Source: Salisapilia sapeloensis CBS 127946 (lineage: Eukaryota; Protista; Oomycota). Taken from it: a stretch of 64,000 bases of DNA. The position numbers were made by a program, and so were the translations under genes. The notes beneath the pieces were generated by a model that had not been told where the DNA came from, searched no databases, and saw only the letters and a list, made by a program, of their open reading frames with translations. The stretch is taken from positions 62,001-126,000 of the forward strand of contig JAADVB010000003.1 of assembly GCA_023334545.1 (NCBI GenBank), given 5' to 3'. Positions 57,239-63,855 of this stretch are shown here, piece after piece; the stretch's first letter is position 1; the number at the start of each line of letters is the position of its first letter.

Positions 57239-58915
57239 TTAGTGGTTGATGAAAAAGGCTTGGAGCAGACCGATGAGTAGGCCGAGGACACCACCCATGA
57301 GTACCAACTTCCACTCGTCTTCTTGAAAGACTGGATGTAAAAGCTGCTCAAACTCTTCGGAACTGATGCCCTTCATCTTTTCTCGTAAAGTCGTCTCGAG
57401 ATCCAAAGCTTCCGTCGCATAGTCCTCAATCTGTCGAAGACTGTCTGGGAATTTATCCACAATATGATTCGTCACGTCGTCCTTGATGTTCATGTACGTA
57501 TCTTCTCCGATGCTCATGTTCATAATACGCTCCGTCGTCCTCGCACTGTCGTTGACAGCGTCCTGGACATTGTCGTACACGAGTTCAAACAGGCGATCTG
57601 AGTACGGACCTTTGAGGATGGCTTCGATGATATTATGCGACGTCAAGACCTCCGACGCGACCATTCGACCGTAGACGTACGACACTTCATTCTGTCGACG
57701 TAAGAAGAGACCTTGCATGGTGATACCACAGATACGCTTCGGGTTCACGGGGTTGAAGATCATCTTTAACGCCAACCAGTTCGTCAGTGTCCCGACGACG
57801 AGACCGACGACGGGGAAGACGACCATGCGGTCGGTGTAAACGAACCAGAGACCCATCTGCATCAGACCAAAGAGCAGACCCATGTACGCACCAGCGTTTC
57901 GGATAAACGACAGCTCCTTGTAGCCACAGACGAGGAACATGTTCACGAGAAGTTGCGGGTCTCGCATCATGTTGTGCACGACCATGTCTTCGAGGTCAAA
58001 GACGTCTTCGATATTATTCCGGATTTCATTCATCAGCGCTTCGATGTGTGCCGGAGCTTCTTCCTTGACTTTCTGAATGATCTCGTCTTTCACGCGGGAC
58101 GGTAGGACGTTCCAAAGGTCCGGATTGTACTTGAGGGCCATGTCTTCAATGATATCTTGGATCGTATTGAAGAGAATGGGCTCGAGCACTTCCACCACAC
58201 GACCTGGTTCGACGCGCGAGAAGACTTCCTTGATGCTCAAGAGCTTCTGCGTCATGATCTGACACGTCTGTCGAGCCATCTTCTCTCCTTTAAACGGCAC
58301 AATGCCTTGCCAACCGAGACCGGTGTTTGTGCCTGGAATCTGGAGAACACCGAGGTAGTTGAGAGGGTAAAAGGTCATCCAGAGCGCGAGCCAGATGTGG
58401 ATGTACGTGAAGGCAACGCAGACGAGCGGGATAGACCCGTACTTGATCAATTGCTCGGACGAGATACCAGCGTCTTCTAGTGGATCTTTCAAGGCAGTAA
58501 AGCATAGGATAGCAACGATAATGAATAGAACGAGTAGGATGCCGATAGGTATCGTCGGAAGTTCAATCACCGGTGGGAACTTGGCGGCTTTACTCTTGCC
58601 ATCCTTTTTTTTACTATCGCTCTGATTTTTATCCGTTAGCGGGACAAAGTCCGTCACGATACCAGGAGACGATAAACCTTCTTCTGTCGCGACTTGTGCC
58701 ATACCTAAGAGAGTAAATCGACAACTTGTCGCGAGTTCCTGTGGTTCGATCTGCGCCCATCGTGCCGGAGCAAAGTGAATCACTTCGTCCCCAGAGAAAT
58801 GCCGCAATTGTGGTGCAAGAGGAGCAAAGCGTCCGTTCTCGAACTTGCGTAGCCAGTCCTCGAGCTGCGCAGCGCCCCAATTCGCTGGATTTACCAGCGC
58901 TTCTTGCTTGGCCAT
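57239..58915 (-). CDS. DUF445 (UPF0754)-family membrane protein with an N-terminal SAM-like domain, intronless
   Basis: YIHIWLALWMTFYP, GWQGIVPFKGEKMA, GTLTNWLALKMIFNP, QGLFLRRQNEVS, EFEQLLHPVFQEDEWKLVLMGGVLGLLIG; N-terminal PANWGAAQLEDWL...RF...FSG. Confidence 0.82.
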   Translation of the reverse strand: MAKQEALVNPANWGAAQLEDWLRKFENGRFAPLAPQLRHFSGDEVIHFAPARWAQIEPQELATSCRFTLLGMAQVATEEGLSSPGIVTDFVPLTDKNQSDSKKKDGKSKAAKFPPVIELPTIPIGILLVLFIIVAILCFTALKDPLEDAGISSEQLIKYGSIPLVCVAFTYIHIWLALWMTFYPLNYLGVLQIPGTNTGLGWQGIVPFKGEKMARQTCQIMTQKLLSIKEVFSRVEPGRVVEVLEPILFNTIQDIIEDMALKYNPDLWNVLPSRVKDEIIQKVKEEAPAHIEALMNEIRNNIEDVFDLEDMVVHNMMRDPQLLVNMFLVCGYKELSFIRNAGAYMGLLFGLMQMGLWFVYTDRMVVFPVVGLVVGTLTNWLALKMIFNPVNPKRICGITMQGLFLRRQNEVSYVYGRMVASEVLTSHNIIEAILKGPYSDRLFELVYDNVQDAVNDSARTTERIMNMSIGEDTYMNIKDDVTNHIVDKFPDSLRQIEDYATEALDLETTLREKMKGISSEEFEQLLHPVFQEDEWKLVLMGGVLGLLIGLLQAFFINH

Positions 58916-59147
58916 GACGAAGAATGCTGACTATCGCGTCCGAAACGGTTGATGTCAACTACCTATACAAACATCAAGTGACTTGTGCTGGACAGTCTAT
59001 CTTTCATGGGTAGTGGCTACTTGTAGCATTTCGTAATCTTTATCATTTGTAATTGTCGAAAGTGGCTATTTGAAAGTCGAAAGGAGGCTAGATCGGAAAG
59101 ATTCGAGAAGACGGACACTTGGAAAAACACGTTGTGAGAGAAGAAGC

Positions 59148-60685
59148 ATGGGCGTCGTCAAGGTGAATGGAGAGAGTGAATGGAACTCCCAGTTGACGAA
59201 TGCAGGTGGGAAATTGGTCGTAGTCGACTTTTCAGCTACTTGGTACGTGCTTCTAGTACAAAAGCCATTGGAACGTGTATACTTATAAGATGTAGGTGTG
59301 GGCCGTGCCAAATGATTAAACCGGTTGTGGAGCAATTGAGTAACCAATACACGGATGTTCTCTTTCTAGAAGTGGATGAAGGATCCAATCGGTCTCTCAT
59401 CAGTGCACTTGGTGTAAGAGGCTTCCCAACCTTCCACTTTTACGTCAGTCAGAGCAAGGTTGATGAGCTCGTGGGAGCCGACCAGAACGCTTTGCGTCAG
59501 AAGATCGAGCAATGGCGTCAATCGGCTTTTAACCCCTTCGCCTCCACTGGCACAGCTCTTGGTGGTGGTTCTTCCATCCAGGACGCACGAGAAGCTCGTC
59601 TTCGTCGATTAGCAAATCTGGAAGCTTCTCAAGCGAAAGAGACTCAGAATCAGCCGAAAGATATTCAGCAGACGGAATCGAAAGCGTCCGAGGACCAGGA
59701 GATGGTTTGTGATATGGAAACCGGTGTCTGTCATGTCCCGGAGCCTGCGTCTAACAAGTCCGTTCCGTCGGACTCGACACCAGAAGTGAATCCGGAACTG
59801 ATGAGTCAGCTACAAGAGATGGGTTTCCCAGAGATTCGATGCAAGAAGGCCCTCTTGGCGACCAATGGGCAGGGTCTTGAGGATGCTGTGAACTGGATTG
59901 GTGAGCATCAGGATGACGCGGACATTGATGCGCCCATCCAGTACCTGGATATGGCGCAACACGCGAAGAAACCATTGACGGCAGAGGAGAAGGAAAAGAA
60001 AATTGAAGAACTAAAAGCCAAGATGAAGGCGAAACGAGCGGAGCGTCAGGAGAACGAAAAAGTGGAATTGACTGAAAGCGAGATCAAGAGGCGACAGACG
60101 GGAAAAGGGATGCAAGAGGCACAGGCTGAGCATGAATCTTTGCGTCGGAAGCGAGATATTGAGATGCGTAAAAAAGAAAAGGAAGATGCGAAGAGAGAGC
60201 GTGAACGTCTGCGTCGAGAACTGGAACGTGACAAGATGGAGCGCAAGGCTCGTGGTGGACGTCTCGGTGGTCCTCCGATCGATCTCCCGAATACCGACGG
60301 CGATAACCTTCCGCTTGAAGCAAAAGAAAAGAAAGAAAAGAAAGAGAAGGAGGTCTTGTCTCCGGAAGAGCAGATGGATAAGAGCTTGGACAAGTTGAAG
60401 AGGTACCGTGTCGCGGGAGACGGACATGCTGCCGTCAAGACACTCGGTGTGTACGTCAAGAACCTGTTGGAGAAACCAGACGAGGAAAAGTTCCGTTCGA
60501 TCAACCTCGAGAATGCAGCATTCAAGAAGCGTGTGGGTGGTCTTGTCGGTGGCATCTCTTTCCTCAAGGCACTTGGCTACGAAAAGGACGGCACGACGTT
60601 GGTTTTAAGTCTGGAGAAACGAGATGAAGCGTTGCTAAAGACAGCACAGGAAAAATTGTCGACAGCGTTAACGGAACTGGCTTAA
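59148..60685 (+). CDS. Thioredoxin (WCGPC) - SHP-like - UBA - coiled coil - PUB domain protein, 2 exons
   Basis: VVVDFSATW|CGPC (intron within the Trp codon), VRGFPTFHFY; PFASTGTALGGG; LQEMGFPEIRCKKALLATNGQGLEDAVNWI (UBA); KTLGVYVKNLLEKPDEEKFRSINLENAAFKKRVG...FLKALGY (PUB). Confidence 0.88.
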
Positions 60686-60712
60686 CAAGACTCTTTTTTT
60701 TCTACTGGCATG

Positions 60713-62077
60713 TTATATCGAAAAGAAACGACTGAAGAAACCTTTGGACGGTGTCGGTTTTGTCTCAGGTTCCGTCTCGACTGGTTCTTCCTCTGATTCT
60801 TCTTCCATTAGAGGTTGGAATGGACGTGTCGGGATAGGCGGAGACACGACGTCTGTCTGGATACCACTCACAATGATCGATACGTGGACAGTACCGGTAC
60901 TCGTCGGATCGTACGTCGTGCCGAAGATAATGTTCGCGTCTTCCGATACTTTGTTTCGAATCGTGTCCATCACTTTGTCCACTTCAAATAGTGTCATGTC
61001 CTCACCGCCTCGAATCGTCACGAGGAGCCCGACAGCAGATTCCGTTGGTAGGTCGCCTAGAAGAGGGTTCACAAGCGCCTTTTCCGCTGCCTTGAGCGCT
61101 CGGTCTTCAGCATCATCCGAGCTGCCGGATCCCATGAGCGCTCGCCCGGCGTTCGATAAGATGGTCTTGATGTCTGCGAAATCGAGATTGATTAACCCAG
61201 GTCGTATGATGAGGTCCGTCACGCCTCGAACACCTTCTAATAGCACTTCATCTGCGTATCGGAAGGCCTCTAGCATTGTCGTACGCTTACTCGCGAGCGC
61301 GAGGAGGTTCTGATTCGGAACGATAATCAAAGTGTCGACGTGTTTCGCGAGCTCCTGGACACCAGCATTGGCAAGACGTGTGCGGTTAGGACCTTCCGAC
61401 CGAAATGGCGTGCTGACGACGCCGACAGTGAGGATCCCGAGCTCCCTCGCTGTCGCTGCGACAACAGGAGCTGCTCCTGTGCAAGTTCCGCCACCCATAC
61501 CTCCTGTAATAAAGAGCATGTTACTATCCGACAGAGCTTGTTTAATCTCTTCTTTCTGTTGCTCGGCAGACTTTTGTCCTAACGCAGGCTTGGATCCGGC
61601 ACCAAGACCTTTCGTAACGTCCTCTCCAAGTGTGATTTTATGTGGTGCAAGGGAACGAGCAAGTGCTTGACAGTCTGTATTGGCCACGACAAACTCTACG
61701 CCATCCAGTTGAGCGGACACCATGTTATTAACCGCGTTGCTGCCGGCACCACCGAGTCCCATGACTGTAATCAGCGGTCGGCCGTGCTTGTAAGCGGATA
61801 AGAGAGGAGAGGATCGTTTCGATGTTTCCACCACTTCTGGAGTAGATGTAGCTGTTGTTTCTTGTTTCCGGGGACGAGAAGTATTCGTACGCTTGGTACT
61901 AGCAGCTTTCTTACTTCGTGTGCGACTAGACCGAGGTGGCGAGACATCGTCTTGAGCGCCATTAATTTTGCTCGTACTACTTTCCGTGTGCACTCCATGA
62001 GCTAGGAATGGAGAGCATCGACTCTTTCCGATGTACGTAAGACGTCTCGTAGCAAAAGTACGCGTACAGACGCTCAT
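60713..62077 (-). CDS. ftsZ: Mitochondrial-type FtsZ with N-terminal presequence, intronless
   Basis: MSVCTRTFATRRL presequence; ITVMGLGGAGSNAVNNM, VANTDCQAL, GLGAGSKP, GGMGGGTCTGAAP, TPFRSEGPNR, PGLINLDFADIK. Confidence 0.96.
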   Translation of the reverse strand: MSVCTRTFATRRLTYIGKSRCSPFLAHGVHTESSTSKINGAQDDVSPPRSSRTRSKKAASTKRTNTSRPRKQETTATSTPEVVETSKRSSPLLSAYKHGRPLITVMGLGGAGSNAVNNMVSAQLDGVEFVVANTDCQALARSLAPHKITLGEDVTKGLGAGSKPALGQKSAEQQKEEIKQALSDSNMLFITGGMGGGTCTGAAPVVAATARELGILTVGVVSTPFRSEGPNRTRLANAGVQELAKHVDTLIIVPNQNLLALASKRTTMLEAFRYADEVLLEGVRGVTDLIIRPGLINLDFADIKTILSNAGRALMGSGSSDDAEDRALKAAEKALVNPLLGDLPTESAVGLLVTIRGGEDMTLFEVDKVMDTIRNKVSEDANIIFGTTYDPTSTGTVHVSIIVSGIQTDVVSPPIPTRPFQPLMEEESEEEPVETEPETKPTPSKGFFSRFFSI

Positions 62078-62254
62078 GTAGACTAGAAGAGAGGAGATAC
62101 AGGAATCGATCAGAGCCGTTCGAGTCTGATGCGTATGTCTTAAAATTATAAATTGCCACTGTTCTTGTATTTTGAATAAAATGTATAGGACGATCACTTA
62201 GGATCGTGGCGAGGCTTGCTGGATGCCATGTTGGAGAGCTTGGATCTATTGGGA

Positions 62255-63855
62255 TCATTGGTATTTGATGGTGGTAGTTGGATGGATGGTTGGTACGAGT
62301 TGCTGGGAATGGAGAGGCATGGTCATTTCTTTCGTTGTCAGACGTTGCTGCGTTTGCTTGGATGTAGTCTCATCAGACGAAACTATCGACTCGTTGATAC
62401 CTAGAGACGCATCGTTGGGTTGCCGAATTTCTTCCACGAGCTCATCATCTACCTTTCTTGATGCATCGTCTTCCAGCCATTGTTTCATACTACCAACTTG
62501 CACTTCTTCTTTGGGATGTAAGAGCGCGAACTTGCCGACGACACCGATACCCAAGACCTTTTCAGGAATGAAATCTCCGCAAGACTAGTAAAACATACAT
62601 TAGACGTTGTGGCAAACAGAAATCGAGTAGGTTACCACATAGTTCTGTACCAGTAACTTGGTACAGGGATTTCCATTATGCTCTTGCAGGATCTTGATCG
62701 CTTCTGTGAACGGACGATTATCGATGCGTCCGTCATTCACGGCGACAATGCAGTTATTAGACTGCACCTGAACCCAATCAATGTCTCCAGTCGCGTCATC
62801 GACCTTACCAATTCGTTTAAGCATGATACTTGGCTGGTCTATAAAGTCACATTCCGCTGTGCTCTCTACTTCCACTAGTCGCTCATACAGGTATAGTTCG
62901 AACTGGAAGATCTCTCCGACAGAGTCCTGGATCATAGCATTACACCCACTCGCGACCACTTGTCGACGCATAGCATTTATATCTAAGTTTTATAAGATAA
63001 AAGTATCGTCTATCAAGATATAGCGCTGGACGTACCGCTTTGGACGTAGACAAAGTGGATAAACGTATCACTCGGAATGTCATGAGAGTCGATCGTAATC
63101 TGGCTGTGACTACCTTTAGGTACGGCGTAGTAAGAAGTGGTTTGGAGCTCAGTCGAATCGTCTTCTGAAAAAATGAGTTGGATATAATCTCGATTTGAAT
63201 GGTTTTCTGGCGCTGTTACGTCAATTGTAAGCTTCGCTCCGCGTTGCACTTGTGCTCCAAGGTCCAGTTGGATGATACCACTCGGTCGGAAGGCTAGTAG
63301 TTGAATGGAATAATCTGAGGAAGGCGTTCGACGTTGGAGACTGTATCGTATTCCTTCTACTAGATCGACGTGTTCCAAGAGATGACCTCTATTGAGCAGG
63401 TCTTGTGGCAACAGTCCGACATGATTCCGCACTGGTTCCGCGTTATATTCCAACAAAAGGTTTACGAGAGGGAAGCATGACGCATGACATGCATAATGAA
63501 GAGCTGTCCATCCTTTATCATCTTGATGGTGGACATTCGCATTATACGACAAAAGTAGTGATAGGATTTCCATGCGTCGAGATACAGACGCATCGATCCG
63601 GCTTGAATCACCTTCATCACTATCATCGTCACTACCACCCTCCTTCATCGTACTAGCCTTTTCCAATTCAGCATACCATTCATCATCTATTTCTTCTACT
63701 GGCGACATGCAATGAGCAATCGTCATGACCAGCGGCGTCCGTCCATTCTCATCCTCTTCTTCTACCTGTGCAGCCGTGCTGGACTTGAGCAGCAGTCGAA
63801 TGACATCAATGTCACCTCGTGCACAAGCACTGTGCAGCGTCATGCTGTTCCCCAT
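62255..63855 (-). CDS. Ankyrin-repeat protein with a beta-rich middle domain and a PDZ-like segment, 3 exons
   Basis: LHSACARGDIDVIRLLL, DENGRTPL, DDKGWTALHYACHAS; exon 2 CIVAVNDGRIDNRPFTEAIKILQE (PDZ alphaB-like); splices VQS|DINAM and QNY(V)|SCGDF join track ORFs 63013.., 62600.. and 62255.. Confidence 0.72.

What the first reader, a model, noticed from the sequence alone, without database searches (positions are those of the whole stretch)
60716..60760. Mitochondrial FtsZ ends in a MinD-like amphipathic membrane-targeting helix instead of the usual C-terminal core
Seen: after a Pro/Glu-rich linker the protein ends KPTPSKGFFSRFFSI*, with no DIPxFL-type conserved C-terminal peptide. Established: bacterial FtsZ is tethered through FtsA/ZipA/SepF binding that peptide; the E. 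coli MinD membrane-targeting sequence is KKGFLKRLFGG; mitochondrial FtsZ systems are not known to retain FtsA/ZipA. Inference: this FtsZ may anchor itself to the inner membrane, like engineered FtsZ-MTS fusions, which would explain how a mitochondrial Z-ring attaches without bacterial tethers.
Basis: partly seen in the sequence, partly recalled or inferred. Interest (0 to 1): 0.72.

Follow-up and report, generated by a model that had tools for sequence, protein, structure and literature searches.

The report
Conserved hydrophobic tail on mitochondrial FtsZ
An oomycete's mitochondrial division protein FtsZ really does end in a short, conserved, greasy and positively charged peptide in place of the usual partner-binding end; the peptide appears to be inherited from a little-noticed motif in alpha-proteobacterial FtsZ and may let the protein hold on to the inner membrane by itself, which has not been tested.

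Summary
The minus-strand gene at 60713-62077 encodes a 454-aa FtsZ that ends KGFFSRFFSI*. Transcript contigs cover it unspliced and without differences.

The tail, [KR]-G-[LFI]-F-[GS]-[RK]-[FL]-F-S-[LF], closes every full-length oomycete FtsZ retrieved, after an unalignable acidic/proline linker. Similar tails end intron-bearing FtsZ genes of other eukaryotes, including Mantamonas. No DIPxFLRR peptide is present or lies downstream.

The new point concerns origin. The tail is probably not a de novo or MinD-derived replacement. It matches a conserved island, about P-S-L-F-E-R-V-T-G, in the C-terminal linker of most alpha-proteobacterial FtsZ, 30-100 residues before their canonical end. Position matrices built from either side find the other. 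The oomycete protein therefore looks like an alpha-type FtsZ cut off just after this motif, which has become more hydrophobic.

Direct membrane anchoring is plausible but unproven. Supporting it are high hydrophobicity, net charge +2, a terminal position on a flexible linker, 5/10 identity to the E. coli MinD tail, and tested precedents in chloroplast FtsZ1 and Mycoplasma FtsZ. Against it, the hydrophobic moment does not discriminate and AlphaFold2 predicts coil. A partner-binding peptide is the main rival.

Verdict: a new variant of a known kind.

The parts
60713..62077 (-). FtsZ coding sequence (454 codons plus the stop at 60713-60715); no introns
   Evidence: ORF; Pfam Tubulin and FtsZ_C; unspliced, identical transcript contigs; first ATG of the transcript
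62078..62129 (-). 5' untranslated leader; transcript contigs end at 62119-62129
   Evidence: table 8; no ATG in this stretch
61793..62077 (-). N-terminal extension of about 95 residues, absent from bacterial FtsZ. It is Arg/Ser/Thr-rich and the first acidic residue is at position 32, so it is a presumed mitochondrial presequence plus a variable spacer.
   Evidence: Sequence; poorly conserved (0.39) in the oomycete alignment. Targeting is inferred, not tested.
61295..61771 (-). Tubulin/FtsZ GTPase domain, with GGGTCTG in place of GGGTGTG
   Evidence: Pfam PF00091, E=2e-41; the Cys is invariant in 32 oomycete sequences
60857..61147 (-). FtsZ C-terminal globular domain
   Evidence: Pfam PF12327, E=3e-26
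60746..60856 (-). Pro/Glu-rich flexible linker (residues 408-444), unalignable between oomycetes beyond its first few residues
   Evidence: Alignments A1 and A2; conservation 0.39; mean net charge -2.2 over the 30 residues before the tail
60716..60745 (-). Conserved C-terminal tail KGFFSRFFSI (residues 445-454); candidate membrane anchor or docking peptide

Best explanation
This is the nuclear gene for the mitochondrial, alpha-proteobacterial-derived FtsZ of an oomycete. The polypeptide stops immediately after a 9-10-residue basic, aromatic-rich peptide with consensus [KR]-G-[LF]-F-[SG]-R-[FL]-F-S-[LF]-COOH. This peptide corresponds to a conserved island in the disordered C-terminal linker of alpha-proteobacterial FtsZ, about [PRG]-S-L-F-x-R-[VMI]-T-G. 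The sequence that follows that island in bacteria, including the FtsA/ZipA/MinC-binding end DIPAFLRRQAN, has been lost, and the retained motif has gained extra Phe/Leu. Shown here: the gene, its expression, the tail, its conservation, the loss of the canonical peptide, and the match to the bacterial linker motif. Inferred: on the end of its acidic flexible linker, the tail inserts its Phe/Leu side chains into the matrix face of the anionic, cardiolipin-rich inner membrane, with Lys/Arg at the interface. Each tail would bind weakly, but a polymer presents many tails, so filaments rather than monomers become membrane-bound. That would tether a mitochondrial Z-ring without FtsA, ZipA or SepF, as in engineered FtsZ-MTS fusions and in natural chloroplast FtsZ1 and Mycoplasma FtsZ.
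For: Identity and origin: Pfam domains. The best non-oomycete hits are all alpha-proteobacteria at 52-60% identity. In two trees the oomycete FtsZ lies inside a 100*-supported alpha-proteobacterial group and apart from 18 other bacteria.

Expression and true end.

Conservation.

Spread beyond oomycetes: a profile of the oomycete C-terminal 79 positions, searched against 1.84 billion representatives, found last exons of intron-bearing eukaryotic FtsZ genes ending GGLFSRFFSL, RTLFSRLFSL, SGLFSRFFG, GGFFSKFKIF, ILGRFFAF and KWSQFFSF, and Mantamonas ending GWRKFFKDNW. A stop codon follows directly and there is no downstream canonical exon. In the tree these group with the oomycetes (SH-aLRT 91).

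Link to the bacterial linker motif: 57 of 72 alpha-proteobacterial hits carry it in one aligned block. A matrix built from oomycete tails scores 15 of 74 alpha linkers above the 99th percentile of shuffles (0.7 expected) and 30 of 74 above the 95th percentile (3.7 expected). A matrix built only from the bacterial motif picks the extreme C-terminus as best hit in 48 of 53 eukaryote-type C-terminal regions, 42 of them at p<=0.05. Bacterial intermediates that keep both motifs include SRKGFFSRLHDL (P0135), EKRGLFSKLFGGG (Niveispirillum, P0111) and SKGGFLSRFFGRKN (P0056). The motif is absent from the 18 loci labelled non-alpha, apart from the alpha-like locus L035, labelled Acidimicrobiia.

Membrane-anchor reading: mean hydrophobicity of the last nine residues is 0.85 against -0.05 for the linker. 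Tail charge is about +1.8 against -2.2 for the linker. The tail resembles the MinD tail. Ten-residue FtsZ1 tails ending RKGFL or RR/KLFF bind membranes experimentally (An et al. 2024, PMC11285052). C- or N-terminal amphipathic helices tether Mycoplasma FtsZ and Odinarchaeota FtsZ1.
Against: There is no direct evidence of membrane binding.

The hydrophobic moment (0.54) is not significant against shuffles (p about 0.14) and equals that of the canonical partner-binding peptide (0.51). HeliQuest-style discriminant values (0.3-1.6, mostly about 0.7-1.3) fall in the 'possible' band, not the 'lipid-binding' band.

AlphaFold2 predicts coil at pLDDT about 50-61 for the tail in both models. The models are poor, and membrane-induced helices are often missed.

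Aphanomyces tails lack the helical periodicity.

The bacterial counterpart PSLFERVTG is only mildly hydrophobic (H about 0.4, charge 0) and coexists with the FtsA-binding end. That fits a docking motif as well as a lipid anchor.

The 53 eukaryote-type sequences in the reciprocal test are mostly close relatives. Matches between motifs this short cannot prove homology.

Unchecked scan notes say the same genome encodes MinC, MinD, MinE and a second 'tail-less' FtsZ, so protein partners for the tail may exist.
Confidence: 0.5

Rival explanations
1. The tail is a short docking peptide for a protein partner kept from the alpha-proteobacterial ancestor, for example MinC, a ZapA/ZED-like protein or another inner-membrane protein. 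Membrane attachment, if any, would be indirect.
For: The tail matches a linker motif that in bacteria coexists with the FtsA-binding end and is only mildly hydrophobic. Position-specific conservation of Gly446, Phe448 and Phe452 (0.91-1.0) is typical of a binding interface. The canonical FtsZ end, a proven docking peptide, has the same hydrophobic moment. Unchecked scan notes report MinC, MinD and MinE genes in this genome. When an alpha-proteobacterial FtsZ was expressed in human mitochondria, its localisation to the inner membrane and to fission sites depended on its C-terminus (bioRxiv 10.1101/2020.01.24.917146).
Against: No partner is identified. Hydrophobic residues are freely exchanged for one another (L/F/I/M/W) and K for R, and Aphanomyces shows register changes. 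This looks more like a physico-chemical constraint than a shaped interface. The eukaryotic versions gained hydrophobicity over the bacterial motif (H 0.5-0.85 against about 0.4), which is what a shift to lipid binding would produce.
Confidence: 0.3
2. The tail serves both roles: a weak lipid anchor and a regulator docking site, as reported for cyanobacterial FtsZ, red-algal FtsZA and green-algal FtsZ ends.
For: An et al. 2024 report C-terminal 10-mers with both membrane-binding and ARC6-binding activity. All the evidence listed under the two explanations above is compatible with this.
Against: It is not separately testable in silico and adds an assumption.
Confidence: 0.12
3. The hydrophobic C-terminus is a degradation signal for a matrix AAA+ protease (ClpXP or Lon) that controls FtsZ level. 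It is neither an anchor nor a docking site.
For: From general knowledge only: bacterial ClpXP recognises FtsZ through its linker and C-terminus, and non-polar C-termini are common degrons. No tool result bears on this.
Against: The conserved part extends ten residues and includes Gly and basic residues. Degrons rarely show such a fixed spacing. The bacterial counterpart is internal, not terminal.
Confidence: 0.05

Closest known systems
Chloroplast FtsZ1 C-terminal motif (Z1C; RR/KLFF in angiosperms, RKGFL in moss). Liu et al. 2022; An et al. 2024, PMC11285052.
   Same: A roughly 10-residue basic plus Phe/Leu peptide at the very end of an organellar FtsZ that has lost binding to the usual tether. 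Membrane binding has been shown experimentally, by liposome pelleting and by spiral formation in E. coli.
   Different: It is of cyanobacterial rather than alpha-proteobacterial lineage, so its origin is independent. It is described as an amphiphilic beta-strand with weak binding. The oomycete tail is longer, has four or five large hydrophobic residues, and is untested.
MinD C-terminal membrane-targeting sequence (E. coli ...EEEKKGFLKRLFGG)
   Same: C-terminal position and the pattern K-G-F-Phi-x-R-Phi-F (5/10 identical). The expected logic is also the same: weak binding per copy, strong binding on oligomerisation.
   Different: It sits on a different protein family. There is no evidence of common descent, because the FtsZ tail traces to FtsZ's own linker motif. 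The MinD tail carries more charge (+4 against +2) and is less hydrophobic.
Canonical FtsZ conserved C-terminal peptide (D-I-P-x-F-L-R-R), which binds FtsA, ZipA, SepF, MinC and others
   Same: A short conserved peptide at the end of a disordered linker that connects the polymer to the membrane machinery.
   Different: It is absent here. The alpha-proteobacterial relatives carry both this peptide and the upstream SLFxR motif, so the oomycete tail is not a diverged copy of it.
Mycoplasma genitalium/pneumoniae FtsZ C-terminal amphipathic helix and Odinarchaeota FtsZ1 N-terminal amphipathic helix (bioRxiv 10.1101/2023.08.29.555414; PMC12583498)
   Same: Natural FtsZ proteins lacking a canonical end that bind liposomes directly through a terminal amphipathic segment.
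   Different: They are unrelated lineages with unrelated sequences. Those cases were tested in vitro and this one was not.
Mitochondrial FtsZ paralogues lacking the C-terminal core (Miyagishima et al. 2004; Leger et al. 2015). Recalled from memory; neither paper could be opened here.
   Same: Mitochondrial FtsZ forms without the canonical end are already on record.
   Different: As far as I recall, and as far as eight library searches show, a conserved basic-aromatic terminal peptide and its link to an alpha-proteobacterial linker motif have not been described.

Membership tests
FtsZ (tubulin/FtsZ superfamily) | Tubulin/FtsZ GTPase domain followed by the FtsZ C-terminal domain | tested here: met
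   PF00091 at 142.7 bits and PF12327 at 92.1 bits, both far above their cut-offs
Mitochondrial (alpha-proteobacterial-derived) FtsZ | Groups with alpha-proteobacterial FtsZ rather than with other bacteria | tested here: met
   Inside a 100*-supported alpha clade in two quick ML trees; the best bacterial hits are all alpha-proteobacteria. No cyanobacterial or plastid FtsZ was included in the trees.
Mitochondrial (alpha-proteobacterial-derived) FtsZ | Nuclear eukaryotic gene with an N-terminal targeting extension | tested here: inconclusive
   The neighbouring genes are spliced in the same transcript contigs, so this is nuclear eukaryotic DNA. There is a 95-residue Arg-rich extension with the first acidic residue at position 32. 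No targeting predictor was available.
Mitochondrial (alpha-proteobacterial-derived) FtsZ | Localises to the mitochondrial matrix or division site | not testable with these tools
   Needs microscopy or fractionation
Canonical FtsZ C-terminal peptide | [DE]-[IVL]-P-x-[FY]-[LM]-[RK]-[RK] at or near the C-terminus | tested here: not met
   Absent from the protein and from all oomycete homologues. No such peptide in any frame within 3 kb downstream in the window or in loci L003, L004, L005 and L007.
MinD-type membrane-targeting sequence | C-terminal basic-hydrophobic peptide with i, i+1, i+4, i+5 hydrophobic spacing | tested here: met
   KGFFSRFFSI against KGFLKRLFGG. The spacing holds in Peronosporales, Pythiales, Albugo and Saprolegnia but not in Aphanomyces.
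MinD-type membrane-targeting sequence | Forms an amphipathic helix | tested here: inconclusive
   Hydrophobic moment 0.54, but reached by 14% of shuffles. AlphaFold2 predicts coil at pLDDT 50-61 in two low-quality models.
MinD-type membrane-targeting sequence | Binds anionic membranes and is needed for localisation | not testable with these tools
   Needs liposome co-sedimentation and GFP fusions
MinD-type membrane-targeting sequence | Descent from a MinD tail | tested here: not met
   The tail matches a motif internal to alpha-proteobacterial FtsZ linkers. Nothing points to MinD as donor. The oomycete MinD sequence itself could not be fetched.
Alpha-proteobacterial FtsZ linker motif ([PRG]-S-L-F-x-R-[VMI]-T-G; defined here) | Core G/S-Phi-Phi-x-[RK]-Phi after a disordered linker and downstream of the FtsZ_C domain | tested here: met
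   A bacterial-only matrix scores the window tail KGFFSRFFS at 7.4 bits, as the best site in the C-terminal region, p=0.01 against shuffles. The best site is terminal in 48 of 53 eukaryote-type sequences.
Alpha-proteobacterial FtsZ linker motif ([PRG]-S-L-F-x-R-[VMI]-T-G; defined here) | Followed by 30-100 further residues and the canonical end | tested here: not met
   One residue and the stop codon follow the matched nine residues. This is the difference that defines the eukaryotic form.

The most novel reading that the evidence does not exclude
Alpha-proteobacterial FtsZ carries an unrecognised intrinsic membrane-binding element in its linker, the basic-flanked SLFxR-Phi-TG island. The mitochondrial ancestor already had it. 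Loss of FtsA/ZipA-type tethers during organelle evolution was tolerated because this element, strengthened and moved to the very end by truncation, became the sole anchor of the mitochondrial Z-ring in oomycetes, Mantamonas and other protists. That would answer how mitochondrial Z-rings attach, and would reveal a second, FtsA-independent tether in a major bacterial class.
Probability: 0.3. Interest if true: 0.8.

Novelty: new variant of a known kind. Interest (0 to 1): 0.62.

Why it matters
How the FtsZ ring of mitochondria that still divide the bacterial way is fixed to the inner membrane is not known, because FtsA, ZipA and SepF have not been reported there. A 10-residue peptide conserved across oomycetes, and present in other protists, gives a concrete and cheap test: tail on or off, on liposomes and in cells.

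The link to a conserved island in alpha-proteobacterial FtsZ linkers matters for a second reason. The field usually treats that region as sequence-independent disorder. The link suggests the same element may act in bacteria such as Caulobacter, Agrobacterium or Sphingomonas.

If the tail proves to be a docking site instead, it marks a conserved but unknown partner of mitochondrial and alpha-proteobacterial FtsZ.

Tried and rejected
1. Hydrophobic-moment analysis as a discriminator. It is uninformative for peptides this short: 14% of shuffles reach the observed value, and the canonical peptide scores the same.

2. AlphaFold2 on the full protein with 32 oomycete sequences (mean pLDDT 57) and on the C-terminal 73 residues (mean pLDDT 63). 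The tail is coil in both. Neither model is good enough to argue for or against a helix, so no fold search was run.

3. A word search restricted to residues 382-454 returned only oomycetes, from 38 candidates. A word search with the L007 exon, meant to name that eukaryote, was swamped by alpha-proteobacterial fragments. As a result, named non-oomycete mitochondrial FtsZ sequences (Dictyostelium, red algae, ochrophytes, jakobids) were not sampled.

4. Leger et al. 2015 could not be opened by DOI or PMC id. Statements about mitochondrial FtsZ paralogue types and Min distribution therefore rest on memory and on citing papers.

5. Eight library searches found no paper describing this tail or the alpha-proteobacterial linker motif. 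That covers this library only.

6. The oomycete MinD sequence could not be fetched, so FtsZ and MinD tails of the same organism were not compared.

7. The second 'tail-less' FtsZ noted by the scan on another piece of this genome could not be read. The sequence look-up was blank.

8. Readings considered and rejected for the tail: a peroxisomal PTS1, a CaaX box, a KDEL-type signal, or a transmembrane anchor. The end -FSI/-FSL fits none of the first three, and nine residues are too short to span a membrane.

9. A hidden downstream exon carrying the canonical peptide was rejected.

Full report
WHAT IS THERE

The finding lies at the 3' end of a minus-strand ORF, 60713..62197.

The listed ORF starts at a GTG, but the real start is the ATG at 62077. 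Transcript contigs end at 62119-62129, and no ATG lies between there and 62077. The protein therefore has 454 residues:
- an N-terminal extension of about 95 residues, rich in Arg/Ser/Thr and with its first acidic residue at position 32, which is presequence-like;
- the GTPase core and the FtsZ_C domain;
- a Pro/Glu-rich linker (residues 408-444);
- the ten-residue tail KGFFSRFFSI.

IS THE C-TERMINUS REAL?

Four public runs hold the stretch at 95-99% of sampled words. When their contigs are laid on 58900-63000, they skip GT..AG introns of the neighbouring genes at 59241/59295 on the plus strand and at 62245/62297 and 62584/62636 on the minus strand. They also stop at gene borders. They are therefore transcripts, although the runs are not labelled as RNA.

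One contig per run covers about 59117-62129 with no joint, no indel and no base difference. The FtsZ message is unspliced and carries the tail and its stop codon. The contig merges FtsZ with the convergent thioredoxin-UBA-PUB gene, so the 3' end of the mRNA cannot be placed.

No canonical FtsZ end ([DE]-[IVL]-P-x-[FY]-[LM]-[RK]) occurs in any frame within 3 kb downstream.

WHOSE GENE IS IT?

The best homologues are FtsZ proteins of Phytophthora, Nothophytophthora, Pythium, Globisporangium, Peronospora, Plasmopara, Hyaloperonospora, Albugo, Saprolegnia, Thraustotheca and Aphanomyces (59-76% identity). Alpha-proteobacteria follow at 52-60%.

In two quick maximum-likelihood trees the oomycete sequences lie inside a group of alpha-proteobacterial FtsZ supported at 100 (SH-aLRT) and apart from 18 other bacteria. 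No cyanobacterial or plastid FtsZ was in those trees. Oomycetes have no plastid, which is established knowledge. Together with the N-terminal extension, this makes 'mitochondrial FtsZ' the sound reading. Localisation itself is inferred.

CONSERVATION OF THE TAIL

Every full-length oomycete sequence ends in [KR]-G-[LFI]-F-[GS]-[RK]-[FL]-F-S-[LF]. Saprolegniales show the variants GLLSKFFRL, GFLSKFFQL, GGFFGLFKL and GLFGFFKL.

In a 32-sequence alignment, the mean share of the commonest residue per column is 0.89 in the core, 0.39 in the linker and 0.77 in the tail. Gly446, Phe448 and Phe452 reach 0.91-1.0. An island of conservation at the end of an unalignable linker, held across the whole oomycete radiation, shows selection on the peptide. 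The criterion 'the tail is not conserved' is not met either.

BEYOND OOMYCETES

I built a profile from the C-terminal 79 positions of 24 oomycete sequences (A1) and searched it against 1.84 billion representative proteins. There were 33 hits at E<=0.001.

Many hits are short products, which are the last exons of intron-bearing genes on eukaryotic contigs. Their ends are GGLFSRFFSL, RTLFSRLFSL, SGLFSRFFG, SSLFSRFFG, GGFFSKFKIF, GSFFSQFKIF, ILGRFFAF, KWSQFFSF and AWKHLFRL. One hit is a Mantamonas plastica transcript (EukProt) ending GWRKFFKDNW.

The contigs behind three of these (L003, L005, L007) carry eukaryotic neighbours such as Nup85, DHHC, RING and an SK channel, plus further FtsZ exons upstream. 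A stop codon follows the tail directly and there is no canonical exon downstream. L005 also keeps a DUF445 gene next to FtsZ, as the window does.

In the second tree these sequences form one group with the oomycetes (SH-aLRT 91). The branches are long, so the grouping is tentative.

THE KEY NEW OBSERVATION: A MATCHING MOTIF INSIDE BACTERIAL FtsZ LINKERS

While inspecting the bacterial hits I saw tail-like peptides inside their C-terminal linkers, upstream of the canonical end:
- KRSLFSRMAGSMF (P0045)
- SKGGFLSRFFGRKN (P0056)
- EKRGLFSKLFGGG (Niveispirillum, P0111)
- SRKGFFSRLHDL (P0135), and others.

Aligning the last 95 residues of 72 alpha-proteobacterial hits shows one conserved island besides the canonical end. 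It reads about [PRG]-S-L-F-[ESQ]-R-[VMI]-T-G, is usually flanked by Arg/Lys, and lies 30-100 residues before the C-terminus. It is present in 57 of 72 sequences.

In 80 named bacterial genomes the motif occurs in:
- Sphingomonadales (TLFERMSN)
- Parvibaculaceae (PSFFERLTG)
- Micavibrio
- Acetobacteraceae
- Azospirillaceae
- other Rhodospirillales
- Hyphomicrobiales (LLRRLA)
- Rhodobacterales (LIGRMTG)

It does not occur in the 18 loci labelled non-alpha, apart from locus L035. That locus is labelled Acidimicrobiia but ends DIPAFLRRQAN and groups with alpha-proteobacteria in the tree, so it looks mis-binned.

Two reciprocal tests tie the motif to the eukaryotic tail.
- A matrix built only from oomycete tails scores 15 of 74 alpha linkers above the 99th percentile of shuffled linkers (0.7 expected). 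It scores 30 of 74 above the 95th percentile (3.7 expected).
- A matrix built only from the bacterial motif picks the extreme C-terminus as best site in 48 of 53 eukaryote-type C-terminal regions, 42 of them at p<=0.05. The window itself scores KGFFSRFFS with p=0.01.

The 53 sequences are mostly close relatives, and the motifs are short. I therefore put descent of the tail from the linker motif at about 0.7, not higher.

On this reading the oomycete protein is an alpha-type FtsZ that stops right after the linker motif. The canonical end is gone, and the motif has gained Phe/Leu (mean hydrophobicity 0.5-0.85 against about 0.4).

HOW IT MOST LIKELY WORKS

Shown: the peptide is terminal and sits on an acidic flexible linker. 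It is strongly hydrophobic (last nine residues 0.85 against -0.05 for the linker) and carries about +1.8 charge against -2.2 for the linker. Large hydrophobic residues sit at i, i+1, i+4, i+5 and i+8. It shares 5 of 10 residues with the E. coli MinD end, which I read from the genome as EEEKKGFLKRLFGG.

Established by others:
- Ten-residue ends of chloroplast FtsZ1 (RKGFL, RR/KLFF) bind liposomes and bacterial membranes (An et al. 2024).
- Mycoplasma FtsZ binds membranes through terminal amphipathic helices.
- Odinarchaeota FtsZ1 binds membranes through an N-terminal amphipathic helix.

Inferred: the tail inserts into the matrix face of the anionic inner membrane. Polymerisation multiplies weak single-tail affinity, so filaments are tethered without FtsA or ZipA. 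I give this about 0.5.

Evidence that weakens it:
- The hydrophobic moment (0.54) is reached by 14% of shuffles and matched by the canonical docking peptide (0.51).
- AlphaFold2 predicts coil for the tail in two poor models.
- Aphanomyces variants lose the helical periodicity.
- The bacterial counterpart is mild and coexists with the FtsA-binding end.

The main rival, at about 0.3, is that the peptide docks a conserved protein. Unchecked notes of this scan say the same genome encodes MinC, MinD and MinE, and a second 'tail-less' FtsZ. I could not read those sequences. A dual role and a degron role are lesser rivals.

COMPARISON WITH WHAT IS KNOWN

The protein is a member of the FtsZ family and of the mitochondrial FtsZ lineage. 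It is not a bearer of the canonical C-terminal peptide; that feature was tested and not met.

Its tail works, if the inference holds, like a MinD membrane-targeting sequence and like the chloroplast FtsZ1 end. It is not derived from either.

Mitochondrial FtsZ forms without the C-terminal core have been reported (Miyagishima 2004 and Leger 2015, from memory; neither could be opened). In eight searches of the paper library I found no description of this conserved tail or of the alpha-proteobacterial linker island. Reviews of Caulobacter FtsZ describe the linker as poorly conserved in length and sequence.

NOVELTY AND SCORE

Self-anchoring FtsZ is a known kind. This would be an independent, untested mitochondrial variant with an unexpected bacterial antecedent.

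It would moderately surprise a specialist. It also makes the question of how a mitochondrial Z-ring is attached directly testable with a ten-residue deletion. Interest: 0.62.

LIMITS
- Named non-oomycete mitochondrial FtsZ sequences were not sampled, apart from Mantamonas.
- The trees are quick searches with long eukaryotic branches.
- Membrane binding, helix formation and localisation are untested.

Noticed in passing
Bacterial proteins P0045-P0120, P0135, P0138, P0139, P0148, P0152; loci L008-L077: Most alpha-proteobacterial FtsZ proteins carry a conserved island, about [PRG]-S-L-F-[ESQ]-R-[VMI]-T-G, in the supposedly unconserved C-terminal linker. It is flanked by Arg/Lys and lies 30-100 residues before the DIPAFLRRQAN end. 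It is present in 57 of 72 hits and across Sphingomonadales, Rhodospirillales, Acetobacteraceae, Parvibaculaceae, Hyphomicrobiales and Rhodobacterales. It is absent from the loci labelled non-alpha, apart from the alpha-like locus L035. I found no paper on it.
   Followed up: partly
L056, L082, L086 (Nitrospinota and Nitrospirota FtsZ): A second peptide resembling the canonical end, DRP[TA]F[MLI]RR, lies about 25-30 residues upstream of the real C-terminal peptide. It looks like a duplicated docking motif.
   Followed up: no
window 61475-61495 (minus strand): The tubulin-signature loop reads GGGTCTG instead of GGGTGTG. The Cys is invariant in all 32 aligned oomycete FtsZ sequences, and NTDCQAL likewise replaces NTDAQAL. 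These are lineage-wide substitutions, not an error.
   Followed up: partly
window 59124-60685 (+) and 60713-62129 (-): The thioredoxin-UBA-PUB gene (Pfam Thioredoxin, UBA and PUB domains; 53-nt GT..AG intron at 59242-59294) and FtsZ converge, with 27 nt between their stop codons. Transcript contigs of the two genes merge, so their 3' ends probably overlap.
   Followed up: partly
window 57239-58915 (-) and L005 2538-4373: A DUF445 membrane-protein gene lies near FtsZ both in the window and on a metagenomic eukaryotic contig whose intron-bearing FtsZ ends KWSQFFSF. The contig's FtsZ groups with the oomycetes at 99*, so it is probably an uncultured relative of the oomycetes.
   Followed up: no
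P0144 (352 aa, metagenomic): An AT-rich FtsZ fragment ends ...NNGLFSKIFNKKD with no canonical peptide. It is either a bacterial endosymbiont or another eukaryote with a tail-type end. Its long branch makes its place in the tree unreliable.
   Followed up: no
window 62245-62297 and 62584-62636 (minus strand): Two 51-nt introns (CT..AC on the plus strand, so GT..AG on the minus strand) in the gene upstream of FtsZ are confirmed by transcript contigs from four runs.
   Followed up: no
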